64,000 bases of DNA from Macrostomum lignano. Lineage: Eukaryota. Under the pieces are notes generated by a model that saw only the letters and a program-made list of their open reading frames with translations, had not been told where the DNA came from and ran no database searches. Both the position numbers and the translations under genes were made by a program. This document shows positions 374-63,918 of this stretch, one piece after another (the stretch's first letter is position 1; each line of letters starts with the position of its first letter). The stretch covers positions 117,920-181,919 of the forward strand of contig NIVC01002345.1 of the NCBI GenBank assembly GCA_002269645.1. Reading direction: 5' to 3'.

Positions 374-7399
<7,026 letters not shown>

Positions 7400-8046
7400 G
7401 AAGCAGATACAAAGTTTCAGTTGACGAAAAAAAACTTTTCTAATAAAATAATAAATAATTAACAATCAGTTCTCTCGAACAAAGCCAATGTCAAAGCGCG
7501 GCGAACGTAGTGATTCAGAAGGAAATAATCACGTTTAAATTTCTTGGACGCTTTTAGTAAATAAAAACAAAGACTTCTTTGTAAATAAATAAAAAAGCGG
7601 CTACAGAAAAAACCTTTAGTTGAAAACCTAATGACAGTTTTAAAAAATTTTAATAACGTTTATTAAAAACTCGTACTTATCTACGCTAGTTAATCCGTCA
7701 AAATTACAAGTCACCTCTGTAATAGGGCTGAAGGTTACATTGCAGATCTCTAGTGGAAGCTCAACCCTATCTCTATCAAGATTATTCAGTTAGTTTTAGT
7801 CCAAGCGCCGGGACGGCCACGATTAGCACTTAATAGGCAGAGCACAATATTGTAGAAACTGCAATTATCTACAGCTGTAGTATAATGACTGATAAGTTAA
7901 TAGTAACTTTTGTGCATTGGGTTTGTCTGCAGTACATATATGTTCAATTGTGGAATGATGCATGATACAAGGACCACTGTTTATAGCAATATACAGTGGT
8001 CCTTGGCATGATATAGTATATAGTATATTTAATTGTAACTAAGTAG

Positions 8047-15368: not shown

Positions 15369-15749
15369 ACTGCAATTAAGTAGGATATATTAGCCTAGCA
15401 GAAATTTTAGCACACAATGACACAACAAAAGTTTATTAGAAACATTTAGCTCACTATTGGTCATTAAAGATGTGTCATTAATGTATGCAAAGTTTTTAAA
15501 ATTAAAAATTGATATGAAAGCTACAAAAAGTAAGATTTTTTGCTAAAAGCTTTACTTGAGATTAAAGAATCCATAATTCCTAGAAATACAAACAAAATGA
15601 ATGTAAGGATTTATTAGACAGAGATCGATAGCAATAGTGATCAATACATTCTATTCTGCTTTATCCACATTAAAGCACTGATATTGCTCTATCCGATTAT
15701 CACCTGTCTGTCATATTTACCTAACGCCATCAGTTCCAGCTGCTCAGGC

Positions 15750-46000: not shown

Positions 46001-49000
46001 CGGATTATCCTAATTAGGTCATAAATTCATTCCAATTATTCCCTATCTAAATAAAAAATCCCAAATTCCGTCTCCCTAATTACTCGTATATTAATTCATA
46101 AATTAAGTCCAATCACTCCCTATCTAGATCAAAACTGCCAAATCCCATCACACTCCCTATCTATAGATCAAAACTGCCAAATCCCATCACTCCCTATCTA
46201 TAAATCAAAACTGCCAAATTGAGTTCACTCCTATCTATAGATCACAAATCCCAGATCCAATCATTCCCTATCTATAGATCACAAATCCCAGATCCAATCA
46301 TTCCCTATCTATAGATCGCAAATCCCAGATCCAATCATTCCCTATCTATAGATCACAAATTCCAGATCCAATCATTCCCTATCTATAGATCACAAATCCC
46401 AGATCCAATCATTCCCTATCTATAGATCACAAAATTCCACTTCCTATCTAAAGATCGAGAACCACTCCCTATCTATAGATCACAAAATCCCATCACTTCC
46501 TATCTATAGATTAAGAACCACTCCCTATCTATAGATCAAGAACCACTCCCTATCTATAAATCAAGAACCACTCCCTGTCTATAAATCAAGAACCACTCCC
46601 TATCTATAAATCACAAATCTTAAATCCCATCACACACTATCTATAGATCAAAACTTCCATATCCCATCACTCCCTATCTACGAGGGATCTTAGTCTTAAT
46701 TCGTAGATCTGAAATCCACTTAATCAACATATTGTTCTTAATCTTAGCCTAGAGAGTCAGATCAAAGTACAAATAGTCTCTAGATATCTACGCCACCCCA
46801 CCCCCCCTCGCAGGTGGAAGCGCTCACCCGCAAGCTGCCTGAGGCGCAGCGCACTCACGCCTATAGCGTGATGCACCGCCTTGGCTCCATGGTGGCCCAA
46901 CCGGCCTGGCCCAGCTCACCAACATTCTGGCCAATCAGTGCTCCGCTGTGCGCAGCTTAGCCGCGCTTAAAAAACTCGAACGACTCTGCGGTCAGCTGGA
47001 ACGAGCCGACTCGTTGCCTGGCAACAGCGGATTAACAGACGAACAGTTGCTAACCGCCGCTCACCTGCTCTGTCGTCGAGCAGGCGACGAACAGAATGGC
47101 GATAATAATTCGAAAGATAAATTGTTAGTAGCATCAGGAATCGAACCCGCGGCTGAGCATCGAAGTGTCGGCATTCGCGGCCCGGACTGTCGACTGCTGG
47201 ACCCGGAGCCTGCCAGATCCGAGACGCGACCCGCGCAGCTCGGCAGCTATCAAGTGCTGCTAAGATTCGGCCTGAGATTGCTCTACGCTGTGCTCAGAAA
47301 TGCTTCATCAAAAAGCGACTCAGAGAGCGGCAAGAATAAAAACTGCTCCCCGATATCGCGTCGGATGCTGGATCCGTTTGTGCCGATTCTGTTGAGCTCG
47401 TTGGATTCGCAACACACAGCTGTGCTCACGGCGGCTCTGCAGTGTCTCAGCCGTCTGGTTCCCCTGCATCAGTTGGCGGCTACAGCTGCTGCTGATCTCG
47501 ATAAAGGCCAAGGCCAATCCAGCAACGCTTACCGGCCGATTGCTAAGCGCGTTCTGGCTCTGTTTAACGAGCAAAGCTTGCACTGGTCAACTAGGCAACA
47601 GTTGCAGCAGCCGTCTCAATTGCAACAGTTGCTGCATAAAACTTTAGCCGTTCTTATTAGACACGACGCGCTGTCGCAGCCGGATCTGGTCACCATAGTA
47701 GACTACATCGCTCTGGATGTGGACAGTCCGCACAGGGCCAGTCACGCTTTTCCTTTGCTCCGAGCTTTGCTAGCTAAACGCCTCAACCCTAAGCCGCAGC
47801 TGAGACACGAATTAGACGTTGAAACTGAGAAAGATCACGCCAGTCTGTCCTCTATCATGGACTCCTTGCGTCGTCTAGTGGTCACATCTGCGCTAGACTA
47901 TGTTCGCAGTCAGTCGCGCGACTGTCTGTTAATCTATCTAAGAGATTATCAACTGCCAGCTAAAACTGTACGACGCTATTTGGACTTCTTCTTAGTTCAG
48001 TTGGATTACGATGGCGTGGATGGTAGGAGCTCGGCTGTGCAGATGCTGGCCTCCCTGATCCACTGCATCTCAGCTGACTGGCTGGTGAATGGCGATCTGG
48101 CCAGGGTGCTGTTCCTCAAACTGTTAGTAGCCGCAGACTCGGAATGCAATGATCAGCTGAGAGCCCGGCTAACCGACTGCTTGCACGGCCTGTTGCGCAG
48201 ATGCGGCGCAGATCAGCGCAGAGAATTGTTTGCCTCAGCTTTGCGTCTGATGCGCACGGATGTTAAACAGTTGTCGCAACGGGTTGTTCAACAACGCCTG
48301 GGTCTGACTGCGGCTTTGTCGTTTTTTGAGTACAGAGAAGTTGAAACAGAGAGCGGCGATGAAGAGAACTGGTCCACAGTTGAATTGCACACCTGCTTAG
48401 CTGAACTGTTGAAGCAACTGGCTGATGCATCCTTGAGTACAGCCGAACACGAGCAGAAGCCTAAAAGCCTAAAACAAGCTCAAGAGACTGACGTGGTAAA
48501 CGAAGCAATCGATCATGCTCTGTTCCGTTGTGTTGACTTGTTAGCCAGATGTCCCAATGCGCTGCAGCTGCAGCAGGTACACACAGACATCTGGTCATTG
48601 TTAGAGAGCCTGCTGAATCATCGGTTCGCTTGGGTTCGGCGTCGCTGTCTGCAGTTGGTTGCTAACAGACTGGCTGAGCAGTCCCAGCCGGCAATGACTG
48701 ACACAGACTCAGCCATGTCTCACTGTCGCACTCTGGCCTTGGCATTTTTTGATCAGTTAAAATCGCCTCACCTGGATGAGGCCTGGTCAGACGATGTGGC
48801 TCGCGCACTTGTTCACCTGTGCTGTCGGGTTCACCAGCTAGAACTGGGTAGTGACGCGAGTCCAGCAACAGCCGGTTTAACCGGCGCAGATAAAGGCTTC
48901 TCAACCGAATGGATTCTGCTCAGAGTTGGCCGAGAGTCGCGCTACGAATTGCAGCATTTGAAGCCGTCAACGCTTCGCCGCTGCCTAGCCTTGAAGGTGT

Positions 49001-49383
49001 GCGCCGGGGTGGCCTCCGTGCTGGGCGGTGACGCTTTGGAATCGTCCGGCTGTCTTCGCCGGTGCCTGGCCGTGGCGGCGCGCGAACTTCGACAGCGAAA
49101 TGCTTCGCCAGAAGTGACCGATCTGGCGCACTCGCTGTTGGACACACTGCGACGGGGCGTCGGAGAGTCCGCCGTGGCCTCGGCGCTGGCCCAGCTGACC
49201 AGGTCGCGAGCTGCTGCCCGGTCCGACCGTGCCGGATCGCTGGCTGCCGCCGCCGTCACTCAACCGGAAGTGTTCGCTAGACGGAAACGCCGCAAACAGC
49301 AAAAGAAAGCTGAAGCGGCCAAGGCCAAGATTGCCAAGTTTAAATTGGCCAGGCGTGGCGGTCTGGCTGCTTCTAAGAAATAG
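31007..49383 (+). CDS. UTP20: UTP20 (U3 snoRNP/SSU processome HEAT-repeat protein), ~2950 aa. Exons 31007-31054, 31156-31227, 31316-31391, 31479-31540, 31630-31700, 31983-33245, 33861-34037, 34125-35328, 37931-38610, 39186-39833, 40470-40596, 42017-42415, 44319-44525, 44620-45882, 46814-49383 (-1 frame break near 46897)
   Basis: Colinear with recalled UTP20 motifs: NTFK|FQGF, LEKWTELN, LEHVFTGISY, VRKAALRC, LNAWDKRHIEMPDFERR, SFFDNV, YLLPL, RLPKLVYRLAEFLRSREHAVRKEA, LARGYTRHVLAHTLHSLL, LDPFVP.L, YLDFFLVQLDYDGVDGRSSA, and a basic C-terminus. All junctions are GT-AG in phase. The donor of exon 6 could be 33239 or 33245. Confidence 0.93.
31800..31975. repeat. 40-bp minisatellite in UTP20 intron 5
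   Basis: ATTCACATTGGCATCGCATTCACCCACCCAACCACCCACC, 40-bp period (31870, 31910). Confidence 0.85.
33247..33853. repeat. 23-bp G-rich minisatellite with a 46-bp dimer, filling UTP20 intron 6
   Basis: CCTGAGCTAAGGGAGGGGTGTAG alternates with CCTGAGCTGAGAGAGGGGTGTAG. Confidence 0.95.
35470..37830. repeat. 33-bp purine-rich minisatellite (~70 units), UTP20 intron 8
   Basis: AGGATAGAGTCAGGATAGAGCTAAGA(G/T)AGGA(G/A)A tandem. Confidence 0.97.
38645..39098. repeat. 28-bp minisatellite, UTP20 intron 9 (interrupted by ~140 bp of unique sequence)
   Basis: CTCCCAGATCCTCAGTTGCTGGGCCAGC units. Confidence 0.9.
39843..40355. repeat. 24-bp minisatellite, UTP20 intron 10
   Basis: CAGTCTCAGGGGTGAGATTCCAGT, drifting to GAGATTTCAATCATATAGTCTC variants. 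Confidence 0.9.
41483..41660. repeat. 24-bp minisatellite, UTP20 intron 11
   Basis: TCAGACTCTGCCATGAACCCTCCC, about 7 copies. Confidence 0.9.
42560..43100. repeat. ~40-bp minisatellite, UTP20 intron 12
   Basis: CCCCATACCCTCTCGAATCCCCCAAATACCTTTTTTTATT units. Confidence 0.9.
43570..44252. repeat. 52-bp minisatellite (~13 units), UTP20 intron 12
   Basis: CTCTAGATCCCCATTCTTCCCATCCATTCTAGAATATCTCATAACAGTCTAG; period 43621 to 43673. Confidence 0.95.
45126..45345 (+). repeat. In-frame 21-bp coding repeat (PEVTKGE-like, ~10 units) within UTP20 exon 14
   Basis: ACCGGAAGTGACTAAAGGCGA units, translated as PEV(T)xxx. Confidence 0.9.
46120..46680. repeat. 37-bp and 29-bp related minisatellites, UTP20 intron 14
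   Basis: CCCTATCTATAGATCACAAATCCCAGATCCAATCATT and CCCTATCTATAAATCAAGAACCACT variants. Confidence 0.88.
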
Positions 49384-49499: not shown

Positions 49500-50190
49500 G
49501 GTTTTTAGATCAGGTTTAGATTCGGGTTTTTAGGTCACGTTTAGATTCAAGTTTGTAGATCAGATTTAGATTCGGGTTTTTTAGGTCAGGTTTAGATTCA
49601 AGTTTGTAGATCAGATTTAGATTCGGGTTGTTTAGGTCACGTTTAGATTCAAGTTTATAGATCAGATTTAGATTCGGGTTTTTTAGGTCAGGTTTAGATT
49701 CAAGTTTTTAGGTCAGGTTTAGATTCGGGTTTTTTAGGTCAGGTTTAGATTCAAGTTTATAGATCAGATTTAGATTCGGGTTGTTTAGGTCACGTTTAGA
49801 TTCAAGTTTATAGATCAGATTTAGATTCGGGTTTTTTAGGTCAGGTTTAGATTCAAGTTTGTAGATCAGATTTAGATTCGGGTTGTTTAGGTCACGTTTA
49901 GATTCAAGTTTATAGATCAGATTTAGATTCGGGTTTTTTAGGTCAGGTTTAGATTCAAGTTTTTAGGTCAGGTTTAGATTCGGGTTTTTTAGGTCAGGTT
50001 TAGATTCAAGTTTATAGATCAGATTTAGATTCGGGTTGTTTAGGTCACGTTTAGATTCAAGTTTATAGATCAGATTTAGATTCGGGTTTTTTAGGTCAGG
50101 TTTAGATTCAAGTTTTTAGGTCAGGTTTAGATTCGGGTTTCTTAGGTCAGGTTTAGATTCAAGTTTTTAGGTCAGGTTGAGATCCGGGTC
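49500..50190. repeat. 25/26-bp monomer satellite with 51-bp and 102-bp higher-order structure, immediately 3' of UTP20
   Basis: TTTAGATTCGGGTT(T/G)TTTAGGTCA(G/C)G alternates with TTTAGATTCAAGTTT(A/G)TAGATCAGA. Confidence 0.93.
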
Positions 50191-50679
50191 TTTAAATTAT
50201 ATTCAAATTCGAATTCAGATTTCAAACAGAGTACAATTAAGGCATGATTTGAGAAGTTTCTTTTCGATTTCCATTTATTAATGTGGTTCACTGATGCAAA
50301 TGCTTAGCAAGTGATGTGTAATTGTCTCTGATTTATCATTATCCTACTTTCCTGTTGATTTCATCTTACTTCCTTCCCGCTGTGCCCATTGTGCGTTGTC
50401 TTCTTTGGCTAAAGATTTGTTAAAGTTGGCCAAGAATTTAAAGTTTAAGAATTGTCATTTTCTAGCTCGGCCAACGCATTTGGTACTGCAGTTGAGCACC
50501 GCGAGTTGCACTGCTGTGGCATTAAATATAATCCCAGTTTGGGCATTTTATATGTTGCTCGTCAGTTTTGTGGACACGAAATGTTGCTGCAGTTTTTAGT
50601 AGGATTTTTGTTGGCTTGATTTCTTGTAACTGTGGTAAGGGGCTGATGGTGGGTTTCTAGGGATATGCTTGTGCCTGTC

Positions 50680-51517
50680 TGCCTTTCTGTCTGTCTGTCT
50701 GTCTGTCTGTCTGCCTGTCTGTCTGCTTGTCTGCCTGTCTGTCTGTCTGTCTGCCTGTCTGTCTGTCTGTCTGTCTGCCTGACTGTCTGCCTGTCTGTCT
50801 GTCTGCCTGTCTGCCTGTCTGTCTGCCTGTCTGTCTGTCTGTCTGCCTGTCTGTCTGTCTGCCTGACTGTCTGCCTGTCTGTCTGCCTGTCTGTCTGACT
50901 GACTGTCTGTCTGTCTGACTGTCTGCCTGTCTGTCTGTCTGACTGTCTGACTGTCTGTCTGTCTGCCTGACTGACTGTCTGTCTGACTGTCTGCCTGTCT
51001 GTCTGCCTGTCTGCCTGTCTGTCTGCCTGTCTGTCTGTCTGTCTGCCTGTCTGTCTGTCTGCCTGACTGTCTGCCTGTCTGTCTGCCTGTCTGTCTGACT
51101 GACTGTCTGTCTGTCTGACTGTCTGCCTGTCTGTCTGCCTGACTGTCTGTCTGTCTGCCTGACTGTCTGTCTGTCTGCCTGACTGACTGTCTGCCTGCCT
51201 GCCTGTCTGTCTGCCTGACTGTCTGTCTGTCTGTCTGACTGTCTGCCTGTCTGTCTATCTGCCTGAATGTTTGTCTGCCTGCCTGTCTGTCTGTCTGCCT
51301 GACTGTCTGTCTGTCTGCCTGACTGCCTGTCTGTCTGACTGTCTGTCTGCCTGTCTGTCTGTCTGTCTGTCTGCCTGTCTGTCTGTCTGTCTGACTTGTC
51401 TGTCTGTCTGACTTGTCTCTCTGTCTGTCTGTCTGTCTGTGTGTCTGTCTGTCTGTCTGTCTGCCTGTCTGTCTGTGTGTCTGCCTGTCTGTTTGTCCGT
51501 CTGTCTGTCTGTCTTGG

Positions 51518-51560
<43 letters not shown>

Positions 51561-51669
51561 ATGCCCGCCTGTCTGACTGTCTGTCTGCCTGTGTGTCTGT
51601 CTGTCTGTCTGTCTGCCTGTCTGTCTGTGTGTCTGCCTGTCTGTTTGTCCGTCTGTCTGTCTGTCTTGG

Positions 51670-51712
<43 letters not shown>

Positions 51713-51880
51713 ATGCCCGCCTGTCTGACTGTCTGTCTGCCTGTGTGTCTGTCTGTCTGTCTGTCTGTGTCTGTCGGTCTGTCTGTCTGTCTGTCTGTAT
51801 GCCCGCCTGTCTGACTGTCTGTCTGCCTGTGTGTCTGTCTGTCTGTCTGTCTGTGTCTGTCGGTCTGTCTGTCTGTCTGT
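50680..51880. repeat. Degenerate (CTGT)n/(GACA)n tetranucleotide array
   Basis: CTGT/CTGC/CTGA units, with a secondary ~150-bp duplication near 51440-51720. Confidence 0.97.
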
Positions 51881-52514
51881 ATTTTTGTATCGGAGCCTAT
51901 CATATAATTACTTTTTTACGCTGTCTCCAAGTATTATAAAGCAAGTTCGGGCCGCCAGCCACACCGAATAATGAATAAATTTTTGTTATCTTGTCTAGTC
52001 AGACATATTTTGAAACATTTAGCCTATTGGCCGTTAGTATTTCGCGATGACCTAAAAAAGAGCTATAAAAATTCCATGACTATAATAAATTCACTAAGTG
52101 CCCCATCGGGACATCCCATGCCTTTCAAAGCTGGGTATATTTGCCAATGCAACGCTATGCAATTCTCAAAGCAATATGCGCTATCAGGTTAAGACTGTGT
52201 GCCAAGCTGGATTTCAGATTCAGGCCTTATCATAAGCGCTTATTTACAGCACTTCGAGCATTTATAGTGCGGCCTTGCTGAATTGCTGACGTCAATGCAG
52301 CTTGATCTTTCCGTGGTTTGCTGTGTTGCTGGCGGCTTCTGCAATGCTTAATGGAGATTTCAGATGGGGTTTAATTTATTATTGTTAATTCGACTGCGTG
52401 TTTATCCGACTTTGCTGTCGGATTAGGCAAGAGGATTACGTGATTAGAATTAGTCAGTCACTGATTAACGCAGTAGTTCGCTTTTAGAATTTCACGCGTT
52501 TCCAGGCTTGTCCG

Positions 52515-54833
52515 TGTCTTTGCATTCCTGATCTTAGTGTCTTTGCATTCCTGATCTTAGTGTCTTTGCATTCCTAATCTTAGTGTCTTCATTCCTGATC
52601 TTAGTGTCTTTGCATTCCTGATCTTAGTCTCTGCATTCCTGATCTTAGTGTCTTTGCATTCCTGATCTTAGTCTCTGCATTCCTGATCTTAGTGTCTTTG
52701 CATTCCTGATCTTAGTCTCTGCATTCCTGATCTTAGTGTCTTTGCATTCCTGATCTTAGTGTCTTTGCATTCCTAATCTTAGTGTCTTTGCATTCCTGAT
52801 CTTAGTGTCTTCATTCCTGATCTTAGTGTCTTTGCATTCCTGATCTTAGTGTCTTTGCATTCCTGATCTTAGTGTCTTTGCATTCCTGATCTTAGTGGCT
52901 TTGCATTCCTGATCTTAGTGTCTTTGCATTCCTGATCTTAGTGTCTTTTCATTCCTGATCTTAGTGTCTTTGCATTCCTGATCTTAGTGTCTTTGCATTC
53001 CTGATCTTAGTGTCTTTGCATTCCTGATCTTAGTGTCTTTGCATTCCTGATCTTAGTGTCTGCATTCCTGATCTTAGTGTCTTTGCATTCCTGATCTTAG
53101 TGTCTTTGCATTCCTGATCTTAGTGTCTTTGCATTCCTGATCTTAGTGTCTTTGCATTCCTGATCTTAGTGGCTTTGCATTCCTGATCTTAGTGTCTTTG
53201 CATTCCTGATCTTAGTGTCTTTGCATTCCTAATCTTAGTGTCTTTGCATTCCTAATCTTAGTGTCTTTGCATTCCTGATCTTAGTGTCTGCATTCCTGAT
53301 CTTAGTGTCTGCATTCCTGATCTTAGTGTCTTTGCATTCCTAATCTTAGTGTATTTGCATTCCTGATCTTAGTGTCTTTGCATTCCTGATCTTAGTGTCT
53401 TTGCATTCCTGATCTTAGTGTCTTTGCATTCCTGATCTTAGTGTCTTTGCATTCCTGAACTTAGTGTCTTTTCATTCCTGATCTTAGTGTCTGCATTCCT
53501 GATCTTAGTGTCTTTGCATTCCTGATCTTAGTGTCTTTGCATTCCTGATCTTAGTGTCTTTGCATTCCTGATCTTAGTGGCTTTGCATTCCTGATCTTAG
53601 TGTCTTTGCATTCCTGATCTTAGTGTCTTTGCATTCCTAATCTTAGTGTCTTTGCATTCCTAATCTTAGTGTCTTTGCATTCCTGATCTTAGTGTCTGCA
53701 TTCCTGATCTTAGTGTCTGCATTCCTGATCTTAGTGTCTTTGCATTCCTAATCTTAGTGTATTTGCATTCCTGATCTTAGTGTCTTTGCATTCCTGATCT
53801 TAGTGTCTTTGCATTCCTGATCTTAGTGTCTTTGCATTCCTGATCTTAGTGTCTTTGCATTCCTGAACTTAGTGTCTTTTCATTCCTGATCTTAGTGTCT
53901 GCATTCCTGATCTTAGTGTCTTTGCATTCCTGATCTTAGTGTCTTTTCATTCCTGATCTTAGTGTCTTTGCATTCCTGATCTTAGTGTCTGCATTCCTGA
54001 TCTTAGTGTCTTTTCATTCCTGATCTTAGTGTCTTTGCATTCCTGATCTTAGTGTCTTTGCATTCCTAATCTTAGTGTCTTTGCATTCCTGATCTTAGTG
54101 TCTTCATTCCTGATCTTAGTGTCTTTGCATTCCTGATCTTAGTCTCTGCATTCCTGATCTTAGTGTCTTTGCATTCCTGATCTTAGTGTCTTTGCATTCC
54201 TAATCTTAGTGTCTTTGCATTCCTGATCTTAGTGTCTTCATTCCTGATCTTAGTGTCTTTGCATTCCTGATCTTAGTGTCTTTGCATTCCTGATCTTAGT
54301 GTCTTTGCATTCCTGATCTTAGTGTCTTTGCATTCCTGATCTTAGTGTCTTTGCATTCCTGATCTTAGTGTCTTTTCATTCCTGATCTTAGTGTCTTCAT
54401 TCCTGATCTTAGTGTCTTTGCATTCCTGATCTTAGTGTCTTTGCATTCCTGATCTTAGTGTCTTTTCATTCCTGATCTTAGTGTCTTTGCATTCCTGATC
54501 TTAGTGTCTTTGCATTCCTGATCTTAGTGTCTTTGCATTCCTGATCTTAGTGTCTTTGCATTCCTGATCTTAGTGTCTGCATTCCTGATCTTAGTGTCTT
54601 TGCATTCCTGATCTTAGTGTCTTTGCATTCCTGATCTTAGTGTCTTTTCATTCCTGATCTTAGTGTCTTTGCATTCCTGATCTTAGTGTCTTTGCATTCC
54701 TGATCTTAGTGTCTTTGCATTCCTGATCTTAGTGTCTTTTCATTCCTGATCTTAGTGTCTTTGCATTCCTGATCTTAGTGTCTTTGCATTCCTAATCTTA
54801 GTGTCTTTGCATTCCTGATCTTAGTGTCTTTTC
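52515..54833. repeat. 23-bp satellite (TTTGCATTCCTGATCTTAGTGTC), ~100 units
   Basis: Highly homogeneous tandem with recurring 2-nt deletion variants. Confidence 0.98.
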
Positions 54834-55379
54834 ATTTCTCAAGCATCAGCAAGCAAAGTCCTCAGCATCTTTGCAATCAACAGATTACCAGCATTTTGTT
54901 TAGTAAGTTGTTAATTCAGCTGGATTTAATTTGCAGTCCTGTTGCCATCATTGCACACTCCAGTTTGTGTAAATTGTTTGGCATAAATTGGCTGCATACA
55001 GGTGAATCGGTCAATCAATCCATCAATGGATGCATAAAATGTCCCCCTGCACGGGATTAAAACAGGAACATTTGAGCAAGGAACCACCCTGTTTAATCGG
55101 TCAACAATATGCCAAATTCATTGATTATGCAGAGCGCTGCCATGCGGTAGGGGAGCTCTTGCTCGTATGATTTTTGAGCAATCGTTTTTCCGATGGACAA
55201 TGATTGGGAGCAGGGATAAGCAATGTCTGGTTGTGCGGTCCAGCGCTTATTTTATAATTGGCTCTGCTTGACGTGAATTCTTTTTTTACTTTCTGATAAA
55301 ACACTGCAGACATAATTGCTAATTCTCTAATTGCAGTGTTGACAAAAAGTGGGTGGATTATGATTGATTCCGTGTGTTG

Positions 55380-55795
55380 ACAGATAGATAGATAGGTAGA
55401 TAGATAGATAGATAGATAGATGGATGGATGGATAGATAGACACACATGTAGACAGACAGAAAGACAGGCAGACAGACAGACAGACAGACAGACAGACATA
55501 CAGACAGACAGACAGAAAGATAGACAGGCAGACAGACAGACAGAAAGATAGAGACAGGCAGACAGACAGCCAGACAGACAGACAGACAGAAAGATAGAGA
55601 CAGGCAGACAGACAGCCAGACAGACAGACAGAAAGATAGACAGACAGACAGACAGACAGAAAGATAGACAGGCAGACAGACAGACAGAAGGATATACAGA
55701 CAGACGGACAGACAGACAGACAGACAGAAGGATAGACAGGCAGACAGACAGACAGACAGACAGACAGAAGGATAGACAGGCAGACAGACAGACAA
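55380..55795. repeat. (GATA)n/(GACA)n microsatellite
   Basis: GATA run grading into GACA/GGCA units. Confidence 0.95.
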
Positions 55796-57565: not shown

Positions 57566-59520
57566 TCAGATGAGGGTCTCCCTCGTTGTGTCCGCGGCCG
57601 CTGCCTGCCAGCTGGCAGCCGAGTCGCTTTCATATCCAGCTTCTCTTCTTCCTCTTTGAAGCAGCTGCTGTTGCTGCCGCTGCTGCTGCTGTTGCAGCTT
57701 CAGCTGTTGCAGAATTCTCGGACGAACCGCCTGCTTCTGGACGGCCGCGGCTGCGGCGGCTGCCTTCGAGGCCGGCCGAAGAAACGTCGACGGGCTCGAC
57801 TCCAGGCGGACAATCTCCGGCGGCGACGGTGGCGACGGCTGGCGCCAGGCCGACATCGGCGCCGGCGGCGTTAGCGGCGGAGTCAGCAGCGGTGGAGGCG
57901 GAGGCGTTGGAGGCGGCGGCGACAGGCGACGAACTTCGGGTCGATGACGAGGACAAGAGCCCCGGCCGCTGGTTGGAGCAGGTCGACGACGAGGCTGATG
58001 ATGCCTCTGCTGATGCTGCTGATGCTGCACCAGCTGTCGCTGCTGTTGAATCTCTTTACGTCGTCGTTTCGTCATCTTTGAGATGTCAACGCTATCGGCA
58101 GCTGCCTCGTCAGACGAATCGGCATTCACCCGGATGTGGCAGCGGTTGTCGCAACGCTGGCGCTGTCGTCGTCGCAGTAGTCGACGCGAGCCTTCTGCAG
58201 GCTGGCCCGCTGCTTCTGGCTGGCGATGCGCAGCAGGATGATGTCGCACAGCATGGAGGACAGGCCGAACAGGGCCAGGCCGCTGCCCAGGTTCATCGAC
58301 AGGCTGTAGAAATCGAAGCGGCCGCCCTCGCCAGACACGGACACGAATATCTTGATGCCGTAGGCGTGCACCAGCATTCGGCGGTCTTCGCCCTCGCTGC
58401 GGTAGTTGTAGGCGTACTGCACCGAGAAGCCATGCGTGTCGGTGCCTCGCCCGGTGTCCAACTCGCGGAAGTGGTACTTCGGCAGGCAGCGCTCGTCAGG
58501 CAAGTCGAAGTTGCACATCCAGGAGATGTCAACTCCGATAGCTCCGCCAACTCTGTAGATGTCCTCGGCCGATTTGGCGTCGCCTGTGGCGTAGTGAAGA
58601 ATGTCGCCCAGCCGGAACACGGGGCAATAAGTGAAGTTGGGATGCTGCTGCTCGTACAGGCAGTTGTGCAGGTAGTCGCTGGTCATCCAATCCAAAATGT
58701 TTCGCCGCTTCTTGTCGAACGCTCGAAAGTCGACGCTGTTCTTGAGTAGAATGGTGAAGTCTCTGGCTCGGGTGAGCACAGATTGGCCTGGCAGCTGGAA
58801 ATTGTCCTCCATGAGCAGCGGGCACCAGCCGTACGACATGCAGGTGTGCGTACTGCTGTTGCACTTGCCCGTGCGCCGCCCGTATTCGCCGATGGTTCCG
58901 CCGGCGCAGTCGCTGTCCCAGTAGCAGTGTCCGGCCCTCTCTGGACAAGCCGACATCGACTGGCGATCGGTGACGCGAGCGTTAGTCGTGATAAAGATGG
59001 CGCCGTTCATGATCGGGGGAATGATGTAGTCCGCAGCGTCCCAGACCCTCGCTCCGTTGTCCCAGTCGTCGCTTTTGTTAACAAAATCCAAACCCTTCAC
59101 TTTGAAAACAACGCCGCCCTCTGGAGTCTCCTTGGCCTGGTAGCCTTTCTTGTGCCAGATGATGTAGAACAAGAAGTACACAATCACAGACAGCTGGACG
59201 CTGCGATAAAACAAGCCAAACTTAATGCTTCGGATCACCACCACTTTTTGCAGCTTGTATTCAAAGAAGCCGGCCAGAATTTTGTGAAGAAACTGCGGTC
59301 CCGGGCGACTCGTGCGGGCCTGCGACGGCTGCTTCTCGTGCTCCATGACTGGTTTAGCGTTGGCCTTAGTCTGTCGGGATTGACTCAACGTTGGGCGAGG
59401 AGATTTCGGGTATTTTATTTTCCCTTTGGGCCAATCGGAACCCATCAAGCTTTCATTGGCTGATACTGGGGAATCAGCCAACCTACCCTTGTAGTCCAGA
59501 GTCGAGTGTGGAAGTGGCAT
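57566..59520 (-). CDS. P2RX: P2X-family trimeric ion channel, single coding exon. Core 59520-58129; probable Pro/Gln-rich tail 58128-57566 after a -1 frame break
   Basis: Contains FFEY, TM1, KKGYQ, FKVKG, WDAADY, FITTN, all ten ectodomain cysteines, GWCP, DFTILLKNSVDF, YCPVFRLGDI, GGAIG..I.W.CNFD, AYGI, and TM2 NLGSGLALFG...CDIILL. The first in-frame ATG is at 59520 (alternatives 59445, 59346). Confidence 0.95.
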
Positions 59521-60411
59521 GAGAACCAACAGAGAGGAGGAGAAGCTGAGAGCTTTAATACGAGCTACGGCATCTGCTATTGACAGATTGACAGATTGAA
59601 GTATCTCGCTAAAGAACAAAACTCAAATTTTAAATGACGGAAACGCAAGTCAATCAATAATCGCAGTGCTCAATCGGTAAACAGTTTATTGACAAATAAA
59701 ATCATTAAAATATTAATGAATTTGTTTTACTGGTTGACTATTGACCATATATAAGGCTCTAATTACATGTAACTACCGAGTTTACGTCCAATTCGCACGA
59801 GTTTTATTCAGATTCCTGTAGTCTAGTCAATATTGAAGCATTGATGGTAGACTTAGCTGGATAAAGTATGAATAGAATAAAATATCTGGCAAGCTTGAAA
59901 CCAACGGCAAGTTTTACTAGCTAGTATTATTAAAGATAAAAACTAATCAGACGTAAATTAAAAGTATTGACATCCTCGATATGCTCAATAAATAGGAGTT
60001 AGCTGTTAAATACCGTAATGTCTTTGATACTCACAATAGCTTTCCTTGCAATAGCATCGAAAAAGAAATTATCGAGCTTGTTAGCTAACAAGCTATGTTA
60101 CAAATTATTTAACTCTAATGCTGTTTAAAAATTATTCGAGAAAAGCTCTCCACGCAAAATCGTCAGAAAACATTAAAACTCGTGTTTTAATCGACCCGAC
60201 GGAATGAATAAAGAAACTTGCCAAGTTATTTTGATGTTTCCGCGGACGAGCTTACATAACTGGTTTTTTTGCAGGCGTGGTGAGCAGATTATACATGTAC
60301 TCATTTTTTATGGCAAAAACCAAATAGAAAATATCCTTTAATCAAGTTATAAGCGAAAAAAAGTTCTTCTTCGACGGCTCTAGCTCTTATCCAAAGGGTT
60401 TTTCATACGTC

Positions 60412-61823
60412 TCAACGGTCGTCCTTTTCATCCGCTAGACTCTTAGCGGCAACTCGACCAATTGCTTCTTGCAGAAGCAGAGCTCCGGTGCGAATGACCG
60501 ATCGAGCTGACCGCTTCCGGTTAGCGCCTTCGCCAAGATTGCAGGACTTTCGCTCGCAATCCACCGGTAGCATCTTCGACAGCTTGTTCGACTTGAGCGC
60601 ATCGTCAAGCCTTGGCTTCCTGGGAACTGTGGCGCTTGTTGAACGGCTTCCTCCGCCGGTTTTGATCGACTCGGTGTCCAGAATTAACGAAACAACTTGA
60701 ACACCGCCAACTTCGGCCAAGAACATCTGCATAAATGCATAAATAAATCAGCAAAAATGTTTTTGGTGACCAGATACTGCTAGCTACGTGTCTGGGTCTT
60801 TTCAGGAATAAGGATTCCAACTTTTCAAACTGTTCCAAGGTTCATGGAGGAAAGAAGGGGCAGAATACAGCTCTGCAAATTTAGAGGTTTGTGCCAAAAA
60901 AATCGGTGGTAAATGGCCTGCACGTAAAAGGTCTAAAGAAACGTTCAAATCTTCATCAAATTAATCCGGCTTTTGTGTGATAACGCAGCTTGTGCAAATC
61001 GCGTGATTTGATAGCTCAATTGACGACAGTATCCTCAAAATAAGCATGGCCTACTTACCTGGTAGGTGCCCTCGCCAACTTTTCGTACCAATCGTACGCG
61101 TCTTCCCCGGCTGTCTTTAGCAAACTCGGCCTTGTTCTTCTCTTCGCCGCCCGGTTCGTCAACAGCAGCAGCGATGGATCGCCTGAGCAGAGCGCCTGAA
61201 CGTTGGCGCTTTTCAGGCGACGTAGCGTAATAGGCAATCAGATCGACTACGGTTTTGAATCGGCGGTTCGAGTACAGGTAGTAACCAGCCGGGCTCTCCC
61301 TGACCAGGTAGTGCTTCACCCTAGAGGACTCTTGCTTCGTCAGCTGGCCCTCTACCACGGAGGCGCTTCGCCGAGCTCGGAAGAGACGGGACATCAGCGC
61401 AGCCACGGAGGAGTTACGCACTCCGTCGGCCCCGTCACGTCGCCTCGAAGAGTTCACTTCTTTTAGTACGCTGATAGCGTACCTTTCGCGACGGCTGTGA
61501 CAGGGCCTGAGCAGGTAAGTTCCACCCTGCCTGTCGCCGCTAAGCAGCAGCTTGTTGGCCTCCTGTCTGGTGCAGTTCACCCAACAGTCGAGACTTTCCA
61601 CTTGTCTATAAATCGACTCTTCGCTCTTGATTGTAGCGATGGTTGAAACCGGAGTTGAAGAGTCTCTTGGCGGCAGGGCCGGTGGTGGCGGCGACTCTTG
61701 ACGACGTTTCTGCAGCGCGTCGCTCCGTCTGCGAAGTTGAACCGTGTTGTTGTCCGAGTTTTCCACCGCCATCATTGAAGGTGGACGGGGTGGCAGTTCC
61801 GGAGGTTCGCTTGAGTTGACCAT
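60412..61823 (-). CDS. SH2-domain protein with proline-rich N-terminus and a truncated kinase N-lobe. Exons 61823-61059 and 60726-60412, 359 aa
   Basis: Contains PPELPPRP/PPALPPR motifs and an SH2 domain (WVNCTRQEANKLLL..GTYLLRPC..RYAISV..VKHYLVR..YYLY..RFKTVVDLIAYY), then RLVRKVGEGTYQ|MFLAEV. Donor CAG|GTAAGT at 61059; acceptor TTTATGCAG|ATG at 60726. Confidence 0.8.
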
Positions 61824-62444
61824 GGCTAATAGACTGCTTGATGAAGTTTACTAGGAATTCGCTTTCGCTGCGACCAAAAACGAGATCAAACTGCGGTGGA
61901 ATATAAACTAAAAATTAACTAGCTGATCTAAGAGCTATAAGATTCAACAGCATTAAAGCTAAATAGTTTTTAGGGTGGTGTTAAAAATCATTTGACTTCA
62001 TGTTTGCATTACAGTTAGGCGCAGTCGAATCCTGTTTACATTCTGGTGGTCGCTTGAAATTTGGTGGGCACAAATCTGGCTGGCTTTAAAGTTCAGCATT
62101 TCAGCGCATGAGCCTAGTTATTGGAGGTGAAGTTTCACTATAGCTTTTCCGCTAGCTGACAGGATATACAAGCAAACTGAGAGTGTAGAAACTATTAGTT
62201 AGTTATAAGTGTCTGTTACAGAATCTTCCAACTGCATTGGCATAAGCAGCATCAGTGAAAATTAAAACCATCGGATTCAGTTAGAACTTGTTTATGCTGC
62301 CTCTGATTCTAAACAGCTGTCAGCTGAGACAGCTAGTGTGCTTTCTGCAAATAAATATAATTAAATCAAATCGTGTGCATACGTGTTCCTAGATGCATTA
62401 AAACAGTGTAGACCGAAGTAGGGACAGGGTAGGTAGATGCATGG

Positions 62445-63918
62445 AAATCGGCAGATAGAGGCATGGAAATCGGCAGATAGAGGCATGGAGATTTGTAGAT
62501 AGATGCATATAGATCAGCAGATAGATGCATATAGATCAGCAGATAGATGCATATAGAGATCAGCAGATAGATGCATATAGAGATCAGCAGATAGATGCAT
62601 ATAGAGATCAGCAGATAGATGCATAGAAATCAGCAGATAGATGCATATAGAGATCAGCAGATAGATGCATATAGAGATCAGCAGATAGATGCATATAGAG
62701 ATCAGCAGATAGATGCATAGAAATCAGCAGATAGATGCATATAGAGATCAGCAGATAGATGCATAGAGATCAGCAGATAGATGCATATAGATCAGCAGAT
62801 AGATGCATATAGAAATCAGCAGATAGATGCATATAGAGATCAGCAGATAGATGCATAGAAATCAGCAGATAGATGCATATAGAGATCAGCAGATAGATGC
62901 ATAGAAATCAGCAGATAGATGCATATAGAGATCAGCAGATAGATGCATATAGAGATCAGCAGATAGATGCATATAGAGAGATCAGCAGATAGATGCATAG
63001 AAATCAGCAGATAGATGCATATAGAGATCAGCAGATAGATGCATAGAGATCAGCAGATAGATGCATATAGATCAGCAGATAGATGCATATAGAAATCAGC
63101 AGATAGATGCATATAGAGATCAGCAGATAGATGCATAGAAATCAGCAGATAGATGCATATAGAGATCAGCAGATAGATGCATAGAAATCAGCAGATAGAT
63201 GCATATAGAGATCAGCAGATAGATGCATAGAAATCAGCAGATAGATGCATATAGAGATCAGCAGATAGATGCATATAGAGATCAGCAGATAGATGCATAG
63301 AGATTAGCAGATATAGATGCATAGAGATCAGCAGATAGATGCATATAGAGATCAGCAGATAGATGCATATAGAGATCAGCAGATAGATGCATAGAGATTA
63401 GCATAGATAGATGCATAGAGATCAGCAGATAGATGCATATAGAAATCAGCAGATAGATGCATAGAAATCAGCAGATAGATGCATATAGGAGATCAGCAGA
63501 TAGATGCATAGAGATCAGCAGATAGATGCATACATGTAGAGATCAGCAGATAGATGCATAGAGATCAGCAGATAGATGCATAGAGATCAGCAGATAGATG
63601 CATAGAGATCAGCAGATAGATGCATAGAGATCAGCAGATAGATGCATATAGAGATCAGCAGATAGATGCATAGAGATTAGCCAGATATAGATGCATAGAG
63701 ATTAGCAGATATAGATTGCATAGAGATCAGCAGATAGATGCATAGAGATCAGCAGATAGATGCATAGAGATCAGCAGATAGATGCATAGAGATCAGCCAG
63801 ATAGATGCATAGAGATCAGCAGATAGATGCATAGAGATCAGCAGATAGATGCATAGAGATCAGCAGATAGATGCATAGAGATCAACAGATAGATGCATAG
63901 AGATCAGCAGATAGATGC
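62445..63918. repeat. 22/24-bp satellite (GCAT(AT)AGAGATCAGCAGATAGAT)
   Basis: Tandem units; scattered single-base indels toward 63480-63800. Confidence 0.97.

What the first reader, a model, noticed from the sequence alone, without database searches (positions are those of the whole stretch)
58126..59520. P2X channel with an intact fold but a remodelled ATP-binding site: candidate non-ATP-gated P2X
Seen: all ten ectodomain cysteines, both TMs, KxKG (FKVKG, 59103-59092) and the xFT threonine are retained. However, the GYNFRFA motif reads GFSVQYA (SVQ at 58425-58417), and the Lys of RTLIKAYG reads His (RMLVHAYG, 58368-58366). Knowledge: in P2X structures the NFR Asn and Arg and that Lys coordinate the ATP phosphates, and mutating them sharply lowers ATP potency. 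Inference: this channel may respond to a different ligand (protons, Zn2+, another metabolite), be constitutive, or act as a modulatory subunit in heterotrimers. Three clustered functional substitutions with no structural decay argue against simple pseudogenisation.
Basis: partly seen in the sequence, partly recalled or inferred. Interest (0 to 1): 0.82.

Follow-up and report, generated by a model that had tools for sequence, protein, structure and literature searches.

The report
Flatworm P2X with half-dead ATP site
This is an intact, selectively maintained flatworm (Macrostomum-type) P2X ion-channel gene in which one of the two halves of the ATP-binding pocket has been replaced, so it probably cannot be opened by ATP on its own and most likely serves as an accessory subunit alongside ordinary P2X subunits.

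Summary
An uninterrupted minus-strand ORF (CDS 59346-58126, 406 aa) matches Pfam P2X_receptor end to end (3.7e-98). It keeps both TMs, all ten ectodomain cysteines and the P2X fold. Of 59 columns that are at least 80% conserved in 140 other P2X representatives, it departs at five. Four of these are the upper-body half of the ATP pocket: N→S308, F→V309, R→Q310, K→H327 (zfP2X4 N296/F297/R298/K316). The fifth depends on the alignment. The lower-body/dorsal-fin half is kept.

It is not a pseudogene. The same substitutions occur in Macrostomum lignano Mlig019017 (79% identical, RNA-seq-derived model), and dN/dS is 0.06-0.23. M. lignano also has canonical P2X genes and a second divergent paralogue. 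Parasitic flatworms have a separate divergent clade.

Best reading (about 0.4): an accessory subunit whose intact half-site pairs with a canonical neighbour in heterotrimers. Rivals are a homomer with a new ligand, a very low-potency ATP channel, or a non-conducting regulator. Nothing functional was testable. It is a new variant of a known kind, of moderate to high interest.

The parts
58126..59346 (-). Coding sequence of the divergent P2X subunit (406 aa plus TGA). It has no intron across the whole P2X domain.
   Evidence: ORF; Pfam PF00864 3.7e-98; PDB hP2X4 2.5e-75; AF2 model pLDDT 80.7, Foldseek hP2X4 E 7.7e-38, target-normalised TM 0.77-0.86 to P2X1-4.
59347..59619 (-). In-frame upstream extension of the ORF, with an alternative ATG at 59520. 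Probably 5'UTR.
   Evidence: No similarity to M. lignano upstream of 59280. The ATG at 59346 has the better Kozak context (sequence). M. lignano copy P0300 starts 10 aa before LAGFFEY.
59251..59253 (-). L32, at the position of the conserved Thr of the N-terminal YxTxK/R motif (P2X2 T18). The window reads YKLQK.
   Evidence: T or S in 102 of 122 representatives. L occurs in all three Macrostomum divergent proteins and in only one other sequence.
59152..59226 (-). TM1 (residues 41-65).
   Evidence: Helix 41-65 in the AF2 model; aligned with TM1 of hP2X4.
59092..59103 (-). K82-V-K84-G (zfP2X4 K70/K72). Phosphate-binding lysines of the lower-body half-site, retained.
58741..58758 (-). F197-T198-I-L200-L-K202 (zfP2X4 F188/T189/L191/K193). 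Adenine and phosphate contacts of the lower-body half-site, retained.
   Evidence: L226 and V243 (zfP2X4 L217, I232) are also retained (sequence; roles from PMC3866589).
58417..58425 (-). S308-V309-Q310, replacing the NFR motif (zfP2X4 N296/F297/R298) of the upper-body half-site.
   Evidence: The same residues occur in M. lignano, with a synonymous TCG/TCC difference at S308.
58366..58368 (-). H327, replacing the conserved Lys (zfP2X4 K316, hP2X4 K313).
   Evidence: K in 124 of 136 representatives. In the model's beta-hairpin (308-317 / 320-344) residue 327 lies across the strand from residue 310.
58231..58311 (-). TM2 (residues 346-372), with the conserved NLGSGLAL...LCD pore motifs intact.
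58186..58200 (-). L383-Q-K-A-R387, at the place of the post-TM2 YXXXK motif (Y lost, K to R).
   Evidence: Alignment; role of the motif from PMC3360091.
57566..58125 (-). Possible continuation of the C-terminal tail in the +2 frame. It is Q/R/P-rich and ends RETLI-stop (57583-57566), as in M. lignano. It would need a 1-nt indel or a short intron, and this is unresolved.
   Evidence: for example GT..AG 58129-58092, 38 nt. Identical terminal RETLI in P0001. No BLAST-level similarity otherwise. M. lignano copy P0300 also has a frame-shifted tail.

Best explanation
The locus encodes a real, expressed-type P2X subunit. It belongs to an intronless flatworm P2X lineage and to a Macrostomum-specific divergent clade.

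[quoted passage not shown] It has replaced the complementary upper-body half (N to S308, F to V309, R to Q310, K to H327).

Inferred: a homotrimer would therefore have three crippled sites and should be essentially insensitive to ATP. The most likely role is an accessory subunit that co-assembles with a canonical P2X subunit. In a canonical2:divergent1 trimer, the divergent subunit's intact lower-body half pairs with a canonical neighbour's intact upper-body half. That leaves two complete ATP sites and one dead site, and two sites are enough to gate P2X channels. The subunit would then tune stoichiometric ATP sensitivity, gating or desensitisation (through loss of the T18-equivalent), and trafficking or anchoring (through loss of YXXXK, a long tail and a possible PDZ-type ETLI end).
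For: Membership and fold.

Surgical loss: only 5 of 59 family-conserved columns differ, and 4 of these are the upper-body half-site. The lower-body half-site residues are retained. The assignment of residues to the two subunits is from PMC3866589 section 6.

Selection: dN/dS is 0.19 (NG86), 0.23 (LWL85) and 0.06 (ML) over 366 codons against the M. lignano locus L001. Third codon positions are 65% identical, against 85-88% at positions 1 and 2. There are synonymous differences inside the motifs.

Expression of the M. lignano counterpart: its GenBank models come from RNA-seq transcript assembly (PMC5730564).

Canonical partners exist in M. lignano: P0096 and P0158 have NFR and K intact.

Two ATP sites suffice, and receptors with one dead site are functional (Wilkinson 2006, Hausmann 2012, Stelmashenko 2012, as reviewed in PMC3866589).

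The YXXXK motif is lost. Mutants of this motif traffic poorly as homomers and are rescued by heteromerisation (PMC3360091).

The sister paralogue P0157 has different replacements (VVE...R), so the half-site looks degenerate rather than re-specified.
Against: - No functional, expression or assembly data exist for this protein, and co-assembly cannot be predicted with the tools at hand.
- Retention of the lower-body half-site is no stronger than retention of conserved columns in general (54 of 59), so the asymmetry rests on the loss, not on special retention.
- The L191-equivalent is Q in both M. lignano divergent proteins.
- P0157 appears to lack the KxKG segment. This could be a gene-model artefact.
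- The four replaced residues are identical in the window and in M. lignano, which is also what a re-specified pocket would show.
- Whether the window's own genome has a canonical P2X is unknown. There is none within the 64 kb.
Confidence: 0.4

Rival explanations
1. A homotrimeric channel with a re-specified ligand. Adenine and ribose recognition and two or three lysines are kept, but the beta/gamma-phosphate clamp (N, R, K) is gone. The pocket could then bind a less charged adenine compound (ADP, AMP, adenosine or a dinucleotide), or be controlled by protons or metals through H327.
For: S308, V309, Q310 and H327 are identical in the window and in M. lignano div1 despite dS of at least 0.75, with a synonymous change in the Ser codon. 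The adenine contacts are retained in the window. N to S and K to H also recur in schistosomatid divergent P2X (P0181, P0207), which hints at a preferred alternative chemistry. The pore and gating machinery are intact.
Against: The sister paralogue P0157 has VVE...R instead, so no common new pocket is conserved in the clade. With about 80% overall identity, four unchanged residues are expected by chance about 40% of the time. The YXXXK motif and the T18-equivalent are lost, and in known P2X this impairs homomer surface expression and gating. No candidate ligand can be inferred.
Confidence: 0.2
2. Still an ATP-gated homomer, but with very low potency (high micromolar to millimolar). It would act as a damage or lysis sensor, or as an intracellular (vacuolar or lysosomal) channel exposed to high luminal ATP.
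For: [quoted passage not shown] Ostreococcus P2X lacks YXXXK and has an EC50 of about 250 uM. K82, K84, T198 and K202 remain.
Against: In metazoan-type P2X, Lys68, Lys70, Arg292 and Lys309 each matter for potency (PMC3360091). Here R, K and N are lost together. Polar contacts to the gamma-phosphate are described as critical for agonism (PMC5801290).
Confidence: 0.17
3. A non-conducting regulator or constitutively active channel. It would be retained in the ER or endosomes, acting as a dominant-negative or chaperone-like partner, or it would leak without any ligand.
For: The trafficking motif and the N-terminal Thr are lost. A P2X1 PKC-site mutant is listed as dominant negative (Ennion and Evans 2002, cited in PMC3360091). 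P2X6 is ER-retained without partners.
Against: Pore-lining and gating motifs (NLGSGLAL, LCD) are strictly conserved under purifying selection. That would not be needed for a pure decoy.
Confidence: 0.13
4. A pseudogene, or an artefact of assembly or alignment.
For: The C-terminal tail changes frame at the stop at 58126. The gene is intronless.
Against: The 1.2-kb ORF is intact. dN/dS is 0.06-0.23 and GC3 is 0.81. The same substitutions occur in three M. lignano copies. Intronlessness is shared with functional flatworm P2X genes. The alignment has no gaps around the motifs.
Confidence: 0.03

Closest known systems
Macrostomum lignano BOX15_Mlig019017 g1-g3 (PAA81535.1, PAA61171.1, PAA82904.1), unannotated 'hypothetical protein'
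   Same: 79% identical. Same GFSVQYA, RMLVHAYG, YRLQK and LQRAR motifs, intronless, same terminal RETLI.
   Different: There is no flank synteny, and dS is 0.75-1.9. It is therefore probably the orthologue in a different Macrostomum species, or else an old paralogue. The L191-equivalent is Q rather than L. Its tail is a continuous 639-aa ORF.
Schistosoma mansoni SchP2X and other canonical neodermatan P2X (ATP-gated; Agboh 2004, as reviewed in PMC3853471)
   Same: About 41% identical. They fall in the same flatworm group in the NJ tree (54% support). At least Fasciolopsis P0010 is also intronless. Both have long low-complexity C-tails.
   Different: The canonical proteins keep YETQK, NFR, LIKAYG and YRKAK. 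The window protein has lost all four and sits on an accelerated branch.
Vertebrate P2X4 (best solved-structure match, 9bqh / 4dw1)
   Same: Same fold, ten cysteines, TM2 motifs and lower-body ATP contacts.
   Different: hP2X4 N293, F294, R295, K313, T17 and YXXXK are all replaced here.
Mammalian P2X6 (heteromer-dependent subunit)
   Same: The proposed behaviour is the same: a poor or absent homomer that functions in 2:1 heterotrimers with a canonical partner, as in P2X2(2)/6 (PMC3866589).
   Different: P2X6 keeps its ATP-binding residues, and its defect lies in folding and ER exit. Whether the window protein behaves like P2X6 is untested.
Engineered half-site mutants (P2X2 K69A / K308A-type subunits in P2X2/3 and P2X2/6 heteromers, and concatemers)
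   Same: One dead intersubunit site out of three, with the channel still gated by two ATP (PMC3866589). The window protein looks like a natural 'K308A/R290A/N288A' subunit.
   Different: Those are laboratory constructs. This is a naturally fixed gene under selection.
Neodermatan divergent P2X clade (e.g. CAH8840334.1 Trichobilharzia, TPP63337.1 Fasciola, TGZ71468.1 Opisthorchis, VDN14635.1 Dibothriocephalus)
   Same: Flatworm, intronless, the T18-equivalent is lost (to M), N/R/K are variously replaced (some also N to S and K to H), and the YXXXK Lys is lost.
   Different: It is a separate clade. Each clade has 100% bootstrap support, and the joint clade only 4.5%. K84 is usually lost as well. 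Identity to the window is about 35%.
Dictyostelium DdP2XC and other cloned P2X homologues that give no ATP current
   Same: P2X-family proteins that fail to form ATP-activated channels on their own (PMC3853471).
   Different: They are very distant (the ectodomain cysteines are not conserved) and intracellular. They are not metazoan-type receptors.

Membership tests
P2X receptor family (Pfam PF00864) | Full-length match to the family profile | tested here: met
   E 3.7e-98, 329 bits, profile positions 1-353 of 361. 34 PDB P2X sequences matched at E 2.5e-75 to 8.7e-46.
P2X receptor family (Pfam PF00864) | Two transmembrane helices flanking a large ectodomain, with a P2X ('dolphin') fold | tested here: met
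   AF2 helices 41-65 and 346-386. Foldseek top 50 hits are all P2X, E down to 7.7e-38, target-normalised TM 0.77-0.86 to P2X1-4.
P2X receptor family (Pfam PF00864) | Ten conserved ectodomain cysteines (five disulfides) | tested here: met
   C134, 141, 147, 162, 169, 175, 229, 241, 278 and 287 all lie in conserved Cys columns.
P2X receptor family (Pfam PF00864) | TM2 pore motifs (N-x-G-S-G, conserved Asp) | tested here: met
   MNLGSGLALFGLSSMLCD; G354 and D368 are conserved.
ATP-gated (canonical metazoan) P2X receptors | Lower-body half-site: K70, K72, T189, K193 (zfP2X4 numbering) | tested here: met
   K82, K84, T198 and K202. L200, L226 and V243 stand for L191, L217 and I232.
ATP-gated (canonical metazoan) P2X receptors | Upper-body half-site: N296, (F297), R298, K316 | tested here: not met
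   S308, V309, Q310 and H327. The canonical residues are present in 90%, 81%, 93% and 96% of other representatives.
ATP-gated (canonical metazoan) P2X receptors | N-terminal YxTxK/R motif (PKC-consensus Thr) | tested here: not met
   YKLQK; T or S in 102 of 122 representatives.
ATP-gated (canonical metazoan) P2X receptors | Post-TM2 YXXXK motif | tested here: not met
   LQKAR at positions 383-387. The motif is described as 'common to all P2X subunits' (PMC3360091). The alignment here is gappy, so the exact register is approximate, but there is no Tyr within the 13 residues after TM2 that precede R387 (positions 374-386).
ATP-gated (canonical metazoan) P2X receptors | ATP-evoked cation current | not testable with these tools
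   Needs electrophysiology.
Heteromer-dependent accessory P2X subunit (P2X6-like behaviour) | Canonical P2X partner encoded in the same genome | tested here: inconclusive
   M. lignano has P0096 and P0158 with intact sites. The window's own genome is not available beyond 64 kb, which contains no other P2X.
Heteromer-dependent accessory P2X subunit (P2X6-like behaviour) | No functional homotrimer; co-assembly and surface rescue with a partner | not testable with these tools
   Needs co-expression, co-IP or BN-PAGE, and recordings.

The most novel reading that the evidence does not exclude
The Macrostomum divergent P2X forms a homotrimeric channel that is gated not by ATP but by a different extracellular cue. 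Candidates are a less phosphorylated adenine compound recognised by the retained adenine/ribose/Lys half-site, or protons or metal acting on His327. This would make it the first natural non-ATP ligand-gated member of the metazoan P2X family. It would parallel the way insect IRs arose from glutamate receptors.
Probability: 0.17. Interest if true: 0.88.

Novelty: new variant of a known kind. Interest (0 to 1): 0.62.

Why it matters
Metazoan-type P2X receptors are treated as ATP-gated channels with a conserved ATP pocket. This locus is a paralogue under purifying selection in which exactly one face of the intersubunit ATP pocket has been abolished. Its close M. lignano counterpart is represented by RNA-seq-derived gene models; expression of this copy itself was not tested.

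If it is an accessory subunit, it would be the first natural P2X case of a division of labour between binding-competent and binding-incompetent faces. That arrangement is familiar from pentameric receptors but has been seen in P2X only in engineered mutants.

If it is a homomer, it would open the search for a non-ATP P2X ligand.

An analogous, uncharacterised clade exists in schistosomes, liver flukes and tapeworms, where ion channels are of interest as drug targets. Macrostomum lignano has transgenesis and RNAi, so the question can be tested directly.

Tried and rejected
- **Species identification.** A protein search with the neighbouring UTP20 ORF found nothing. The 8000 word-sharing candidates were probably dominated by low-complexity matches, so the search was wasted. 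Exact look-ups of the window's P2X ORF (two possible starts) and of the SH2 ORF found no record. The species therefore stays 'Macrostomum-like, not in the annotated collections'.
- **Retrogene origin of the divergent clade.** I first thought intronlessness marked the divergent clade, because the canonical Mlig018619 has at least 7 exons. However, canonical Fasciolopsis P2X and the neodermatan divergent genes are also intronless. Intron loss therefore predates the remodelling and does not explain it.
- **Common origin of the Macrostomum and neodermatan divergent clades.** NJ with 200 bootstraps gives 4.5% support for a joint clade. This is rejected provisionally. No ML phylogeny tool was available, and deep nodes are weak (54%).
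- **E178 as a fifth functional change.** This is alignment-dependent. HMMER places a 2-residue insertion there and aligns E180 with hP2X4 E168, so I do not count it.
- **Tail homology.** BLASTP of the +2-frame tail against the M. lignano tail is not significant (E at least 0.52). Only the terminal RETLI is shared. Candidate short introns exist, but none is convincing.
- **Antisense ORFs.** The ORFs over the gene on the + strand (57586-58749 and 58783-59463) have no Pfam match. They are the expected by-product of high GC3.
- **Bacterial-type promoter and terminator scan.** Uninformative for a eukaryotic locus.
- **First NJ/bootstrap run.** It timed out and was redone with numpy.
- **Literature.** Searches for any earlier description of such flatworm P2X variants found none. 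The library is not exhaustive.
Full report
**1. What is at the locus**

The minus strand carries one uninterrupted ORF, 58126-59619. Its translation matches Pfam P2X_receptor over profile positions 1-353 of 361 (E 3.7e-98). It also matches 34 distinct solved P2X sequences. The best is human P2X4 (9bqh, E 2.5e-75).

The likely start is the ATG at 59346, for three reasons:
- It has G at -3 and G at +4.
- It gives an N-terminus of normal P2X length.
- Similarity to the nearest relative begins just downstream, at 59280.

With M1 at 59346 the protein has 406 residues.

An AlphaFold2 model built on 53 homologues has mean pLDDT 80.7. It shows helices at 41-65 (TM1) and 346-386 (TM2 and beyond), separated by a beta-rich ectodomain. 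Foldseek returns only P2X structures at the top: hP2X4 at E 7.7e-38, and target-normalised TM-scores of 0.77-0.86 to P2X1-4.

No other P2X copy lies in the 64-kb window. ORFs on the opposite strand over the gene have no family match. They are what a coding region with 81% GC3 is expected to produce.

**2.

The HMMER alignment to hP2X4 has no gaps around the motifs.
- GYNFRFA aligns to GFSVQYA, and LIKAYG aligns to LVHAYG.
- This gives hP2X4 N293, F294, R295, K313 (zfP2X4 N296, F297, R298, K316) replaced by S308, V309, Q310, H327.
- K82 and K84 (KVKG, 59103-59092), T198, K202 and all ten ectodomain cysteines are present.

I then aligned the protein with 148 other P2X sequences: 141 of the 150 best 50%-identity representatives from an exhaustive search, plus seven reference sequences. 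I asked where it departs from columns that are at least 80% conserved among the 140 sequences outside the two divergent flatworm clades.
- Of 59 such columns it departs at five: N308, F309, R310, K327 and E178.
- The E178 difference is alignment-dependent. HMMER's pairwise alignment puts a two-residue insertion there and aligns E180 with hP2X4 E168.

So the departures from family consensus are essentially confined to one face of the ATP pocket. The hypergeometric probability is about 1e-5, but the test is post hoc and three of the columns are adjacent.

- The Thr of the N-terminal YxTxK/R motif is Leu (YKLQK, L32). T or S occupies this position in 102 of 122 representatives.
- The post-TM2 YXXXK motif reads LQKAR.

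**3. It is a maintained gene, not decay**

The nearest database protein is Macrostomum lignano BOX15_Mlig019017 (P0001, 79% identity). It is present as three copies in that neopolyploid genome. All carry GFSVQYA, RMLVHAYG, YRLQK and LQRAR.

The M. lignano gene is a single 1920-nt exon (L001). Only the coding region is alignable to the window (79% nucleotide identity), and there is no flank synteny.

Over 366 aligned codons, dN/dS is 0.19 (NG86), 0.23 (LWL85) and 0.06 (ML). Codon positions 1, 2 and 3 are 85%, 88% and 65% identical. Synonymous differences occur inside the remodelled motifs, for example S308 TCG against TCC.

GenBank gene models for that assembly derive from an RNA-seq-guided transcript assembly (PMC5730564), so the M. 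lignano counterpart is transcribed.

The window's own protein is not in the collections. Because both M. lignano proteomes are in the collections, the window most probably comes from a different Macrostomum species. An unannotated old paralogue cannot be excluded.

**4. Family context**

M. lignano also encodes canonical P2X subunits with every motif intact:
- Mlig018619 (P0096: YETSK, TKVKG, NFT, GWNFRYA, LIKAYG, YRGAK);
- A0A1I8H227 (P0158).

It encodes a second divergent paralogue as well, A0A1I8ISC6 (P0157, 58% identical to the window). That one also has YKLQK but reads GYVVEYA and MLIRARG, and its model lacks the KxKG segment.

In an NJ tree (382 columns, 200 bootstraps):
- the window, Mlig019017 and P0157 form a clade with 100% support;
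- this clade sits on an accelerated branch, with Kimura distances to outgroups of 1.1-1.5 against 0.75-1.15 for canonical flatworm P2X.

Parasitic flatworms have their own divergent clade (100% support). It includes Trichobilharzia, Schistosoma margrebowiei, Fasciola, Opisthorchis/Clonorchis and Dibothriocephalus. In it:
- the T18-equivalent is Met;
- the N/R/K positions are variously S..R..H, I..E..T, S..Q..Q or C..N..K;
- the YXXXK Lys is lost.

The two divergent clades join in only 4.5% of bootstraps. The remodelling therefore looks convergent, although NJ and weak deep nodes (54%) leave a single ancient origin possible.

Intronlessness is not special to the divergent genes. Canonical Fasciolopsis P2X and the Fasciola and Opisthorchis divergent genes are also single-exon. 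Mlig018619 has at least seven exons.

**5. How it most likely works**

Established knowledge (PMC3866589, section 6) says each ATP site lies between two subunits.
- The phosphates are held by K70 and K72 on the lower body of one subunit, and by N296, R298 and K316 on the upper body of its neighbour.
- Adenine contacts T189, the K70 backbone, L191 and I232.
- Ribose contacts L217.
- Lys68, Lys70, Arg292 and Lys309 (P2X1 numbering) are important for ATP potency, and Asn290/Phe291 contribute to agonist action (PMC3360091).
- Contacts to the gamma-phosphate are critical for agonism (PMC5801290).

In the window protein the whole lower-body/dorsal-fin set is present: K82, K84, T198, L200, K202, L226, V243. 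The whole upper-body set is replaced by uncharged or weakly basic residues. A homotrimer would therefore have three sites lacking N, R and K, and I infer it is essentially ATP-insensitive.

In a heterotrimer with two canonical subunits, the divergent subunit's intact lower-body half would face a canonical upper-body half. That leaves two complete sites and one dead site. Two occupied sites suffice to open P2X channels, and receptors with one engineered dead site work (Wilkinson 2006, Hausmann 2012, Stelmashenko 2012, reviewed in PMC3866589).

Loss of YXXXK fits the same picture. Mutating it limits surface expression of homomers, and heteromerisation with wild-type subunits rescues it (PMC3360091).

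The different replacements in the sister paralogue (VVE/R) argue that the half-site is degenerate rather than rebuilt for one new ligand.

I therefore rank 'accessory subunit of ATP-gated heterotrimers' first, at about 0.4. The steps that are shown are family membership, fold, selective loss, purifying selection, and co-existing canonical paralogues in a congener. The steps that are inferred are ATP insensitivity of homomers, co-assembly and stoichiometry.

**6. Rivals**

- A homomer with a new ligand (about 0.2) is not excluded. The four new residues are identical across the two species, adenine contacts are kept in the window, and N to S plus K to H recur in schistosomatid divergent P2X. However, four unchanged residues are expected about 40% of the time at 80% identity.
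- A very low-potency ATP channel (about 0.17) has precedent in Dictyostelium and Ostreococcus.
- A non-conducting regulator or leak channel (about 0.13) is disfavoured by the strictly conserved pore motifs.
- A pseudogene or artefact (about 0.03) is contradicted by section 3.

**7. Loose end: the C-terminal tail**

The P2X frame stops at 58126. The +2 frame stays open to 57566 and ends RETLI-stop, exactly as the 639-aa M. lignano protein does. Otherwise the low-complexity tails show no significant similarity.

A 1-nt indel, a short intron (for example 58129-58092) or a genuine truncation are all possible. One M. lignano copy (P0300) has a similar tail frameshift. The terminal E-T-L-I fits a class I PDZ-ligand pattern; that is from my own knowledge and was not tested.

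**8. Novelty**

Full-text searches found no description of P2X subunits with a naturally ablated half-site in flatworms or other animals. Surveys of flatworm channels simply count two or three 'P2X' genes per species (PMC4794918).

It is a clear family member by fold and profile, but it fails three features that define canonical ATP-gated P2X receptors. I class it as a new variant of a known kind. The interest is moderate to high and depends on electrophysiology.

Noticed in passing
Related proteins P0181, P0191, P0207, P0208, P0214, P0228; loci L003 1001-2923 and L006 1001-2803: Trematodes and a cestode carry a separate clade of intronless P2X paralogues, auto-annotated 'P2X purinoceptor 4'. 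The T18-equivalent is Met, the N/R/K ATP residues are variously replaced (two also N to S and K to H, as in the window), K84 is usually lost, and the YXXXK Lys is lost. They appear to be uncharacterised.
   Followed up: partly
window 57566-58129 (-): The +2 frame after the P2X stop codon stays open for 187 codons of Q/R/P-rich sequence and ends RETLI-stop, identical to the end of the M. lignano 639-aa protein. This implies an indel, a short intron or a recent truncation. ETLI resembles a PDZ-binding end.
   Followed up: partly
Protein P0157 (UniProt A0A1I8ISC6, M. lignano): A second divergent paralogue whose model lacks about 17 residues including KxKG. It also has a 250-residue N-terminal extension that looks like a mis-called ORF. 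It may be a gene-model artefact or a further degenerate copy. No DNA was retrievable.
   Followed up: partly
L002 4001-10368 versus L001 10001-11920, L005 1001-2665: M. lignano canonical P2X Mlig018619 has at least 7 exons over 6.4 kb. The flatworm lineage containing the schistosome-type canonical P2X and both divergent clades is single-exon. This suggests an old retroposition at the base of that lineage.
   Followed up: partly
window 17229-18992, 35344-37814, 52514-54836, 62434-63918, 2389-3428, 43569-44256, 49501-50193: The window is packed with long, well-conserved minisatellite arrays (periods of 20-66 nt, up to about 100 copies). These produce extreme GC and AT skews and long mechanical ORFs.
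   Followed up: no
window 50675-51880 and 55450-55794; L001 19148-20046: Long (CTGT)n/(AGAC)n tetranucleotide arrays. They are the only non-coding sequence shared with the M. lignano locus, where they lie inside the Mito_carr gene span.
   Followed up: no
window 44632-45888 and 46948-49383 (+): Two long ORFs match the UTP20 and UTP20_C domains (1.5e-34 and 4.2e-20). They are probably exons of one small-subunit processome gene downstream of the P2X gene on the opposite strand. A protein search with the second ORF returned nothing.
   Followed up: partly
window 61035-61823 (-), 15684-16418 (+), 6953-7465 (-): Other gene fragments: an SH2-domain ORF immediately upstream of the P2X gene on the same strand (1.3e-13), a Strabismus/Vangl fragment (1.6e-19), and a myosin N-terminal SH3-like plus head start (1e-13).
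   Followed up: no
Proteins P0182 (Littorina saxatilis), P0197 (hagfish), P0188 (unnamed): Sporadic P2X representatives in other phyla also have non-canonical ATP-site residues (for example K84F/N308H/K327R in Littorina, and N to S, R to K, K to Q in hagfish). Natural variation at this pocket may be wider than assumed.
   Followed up: no
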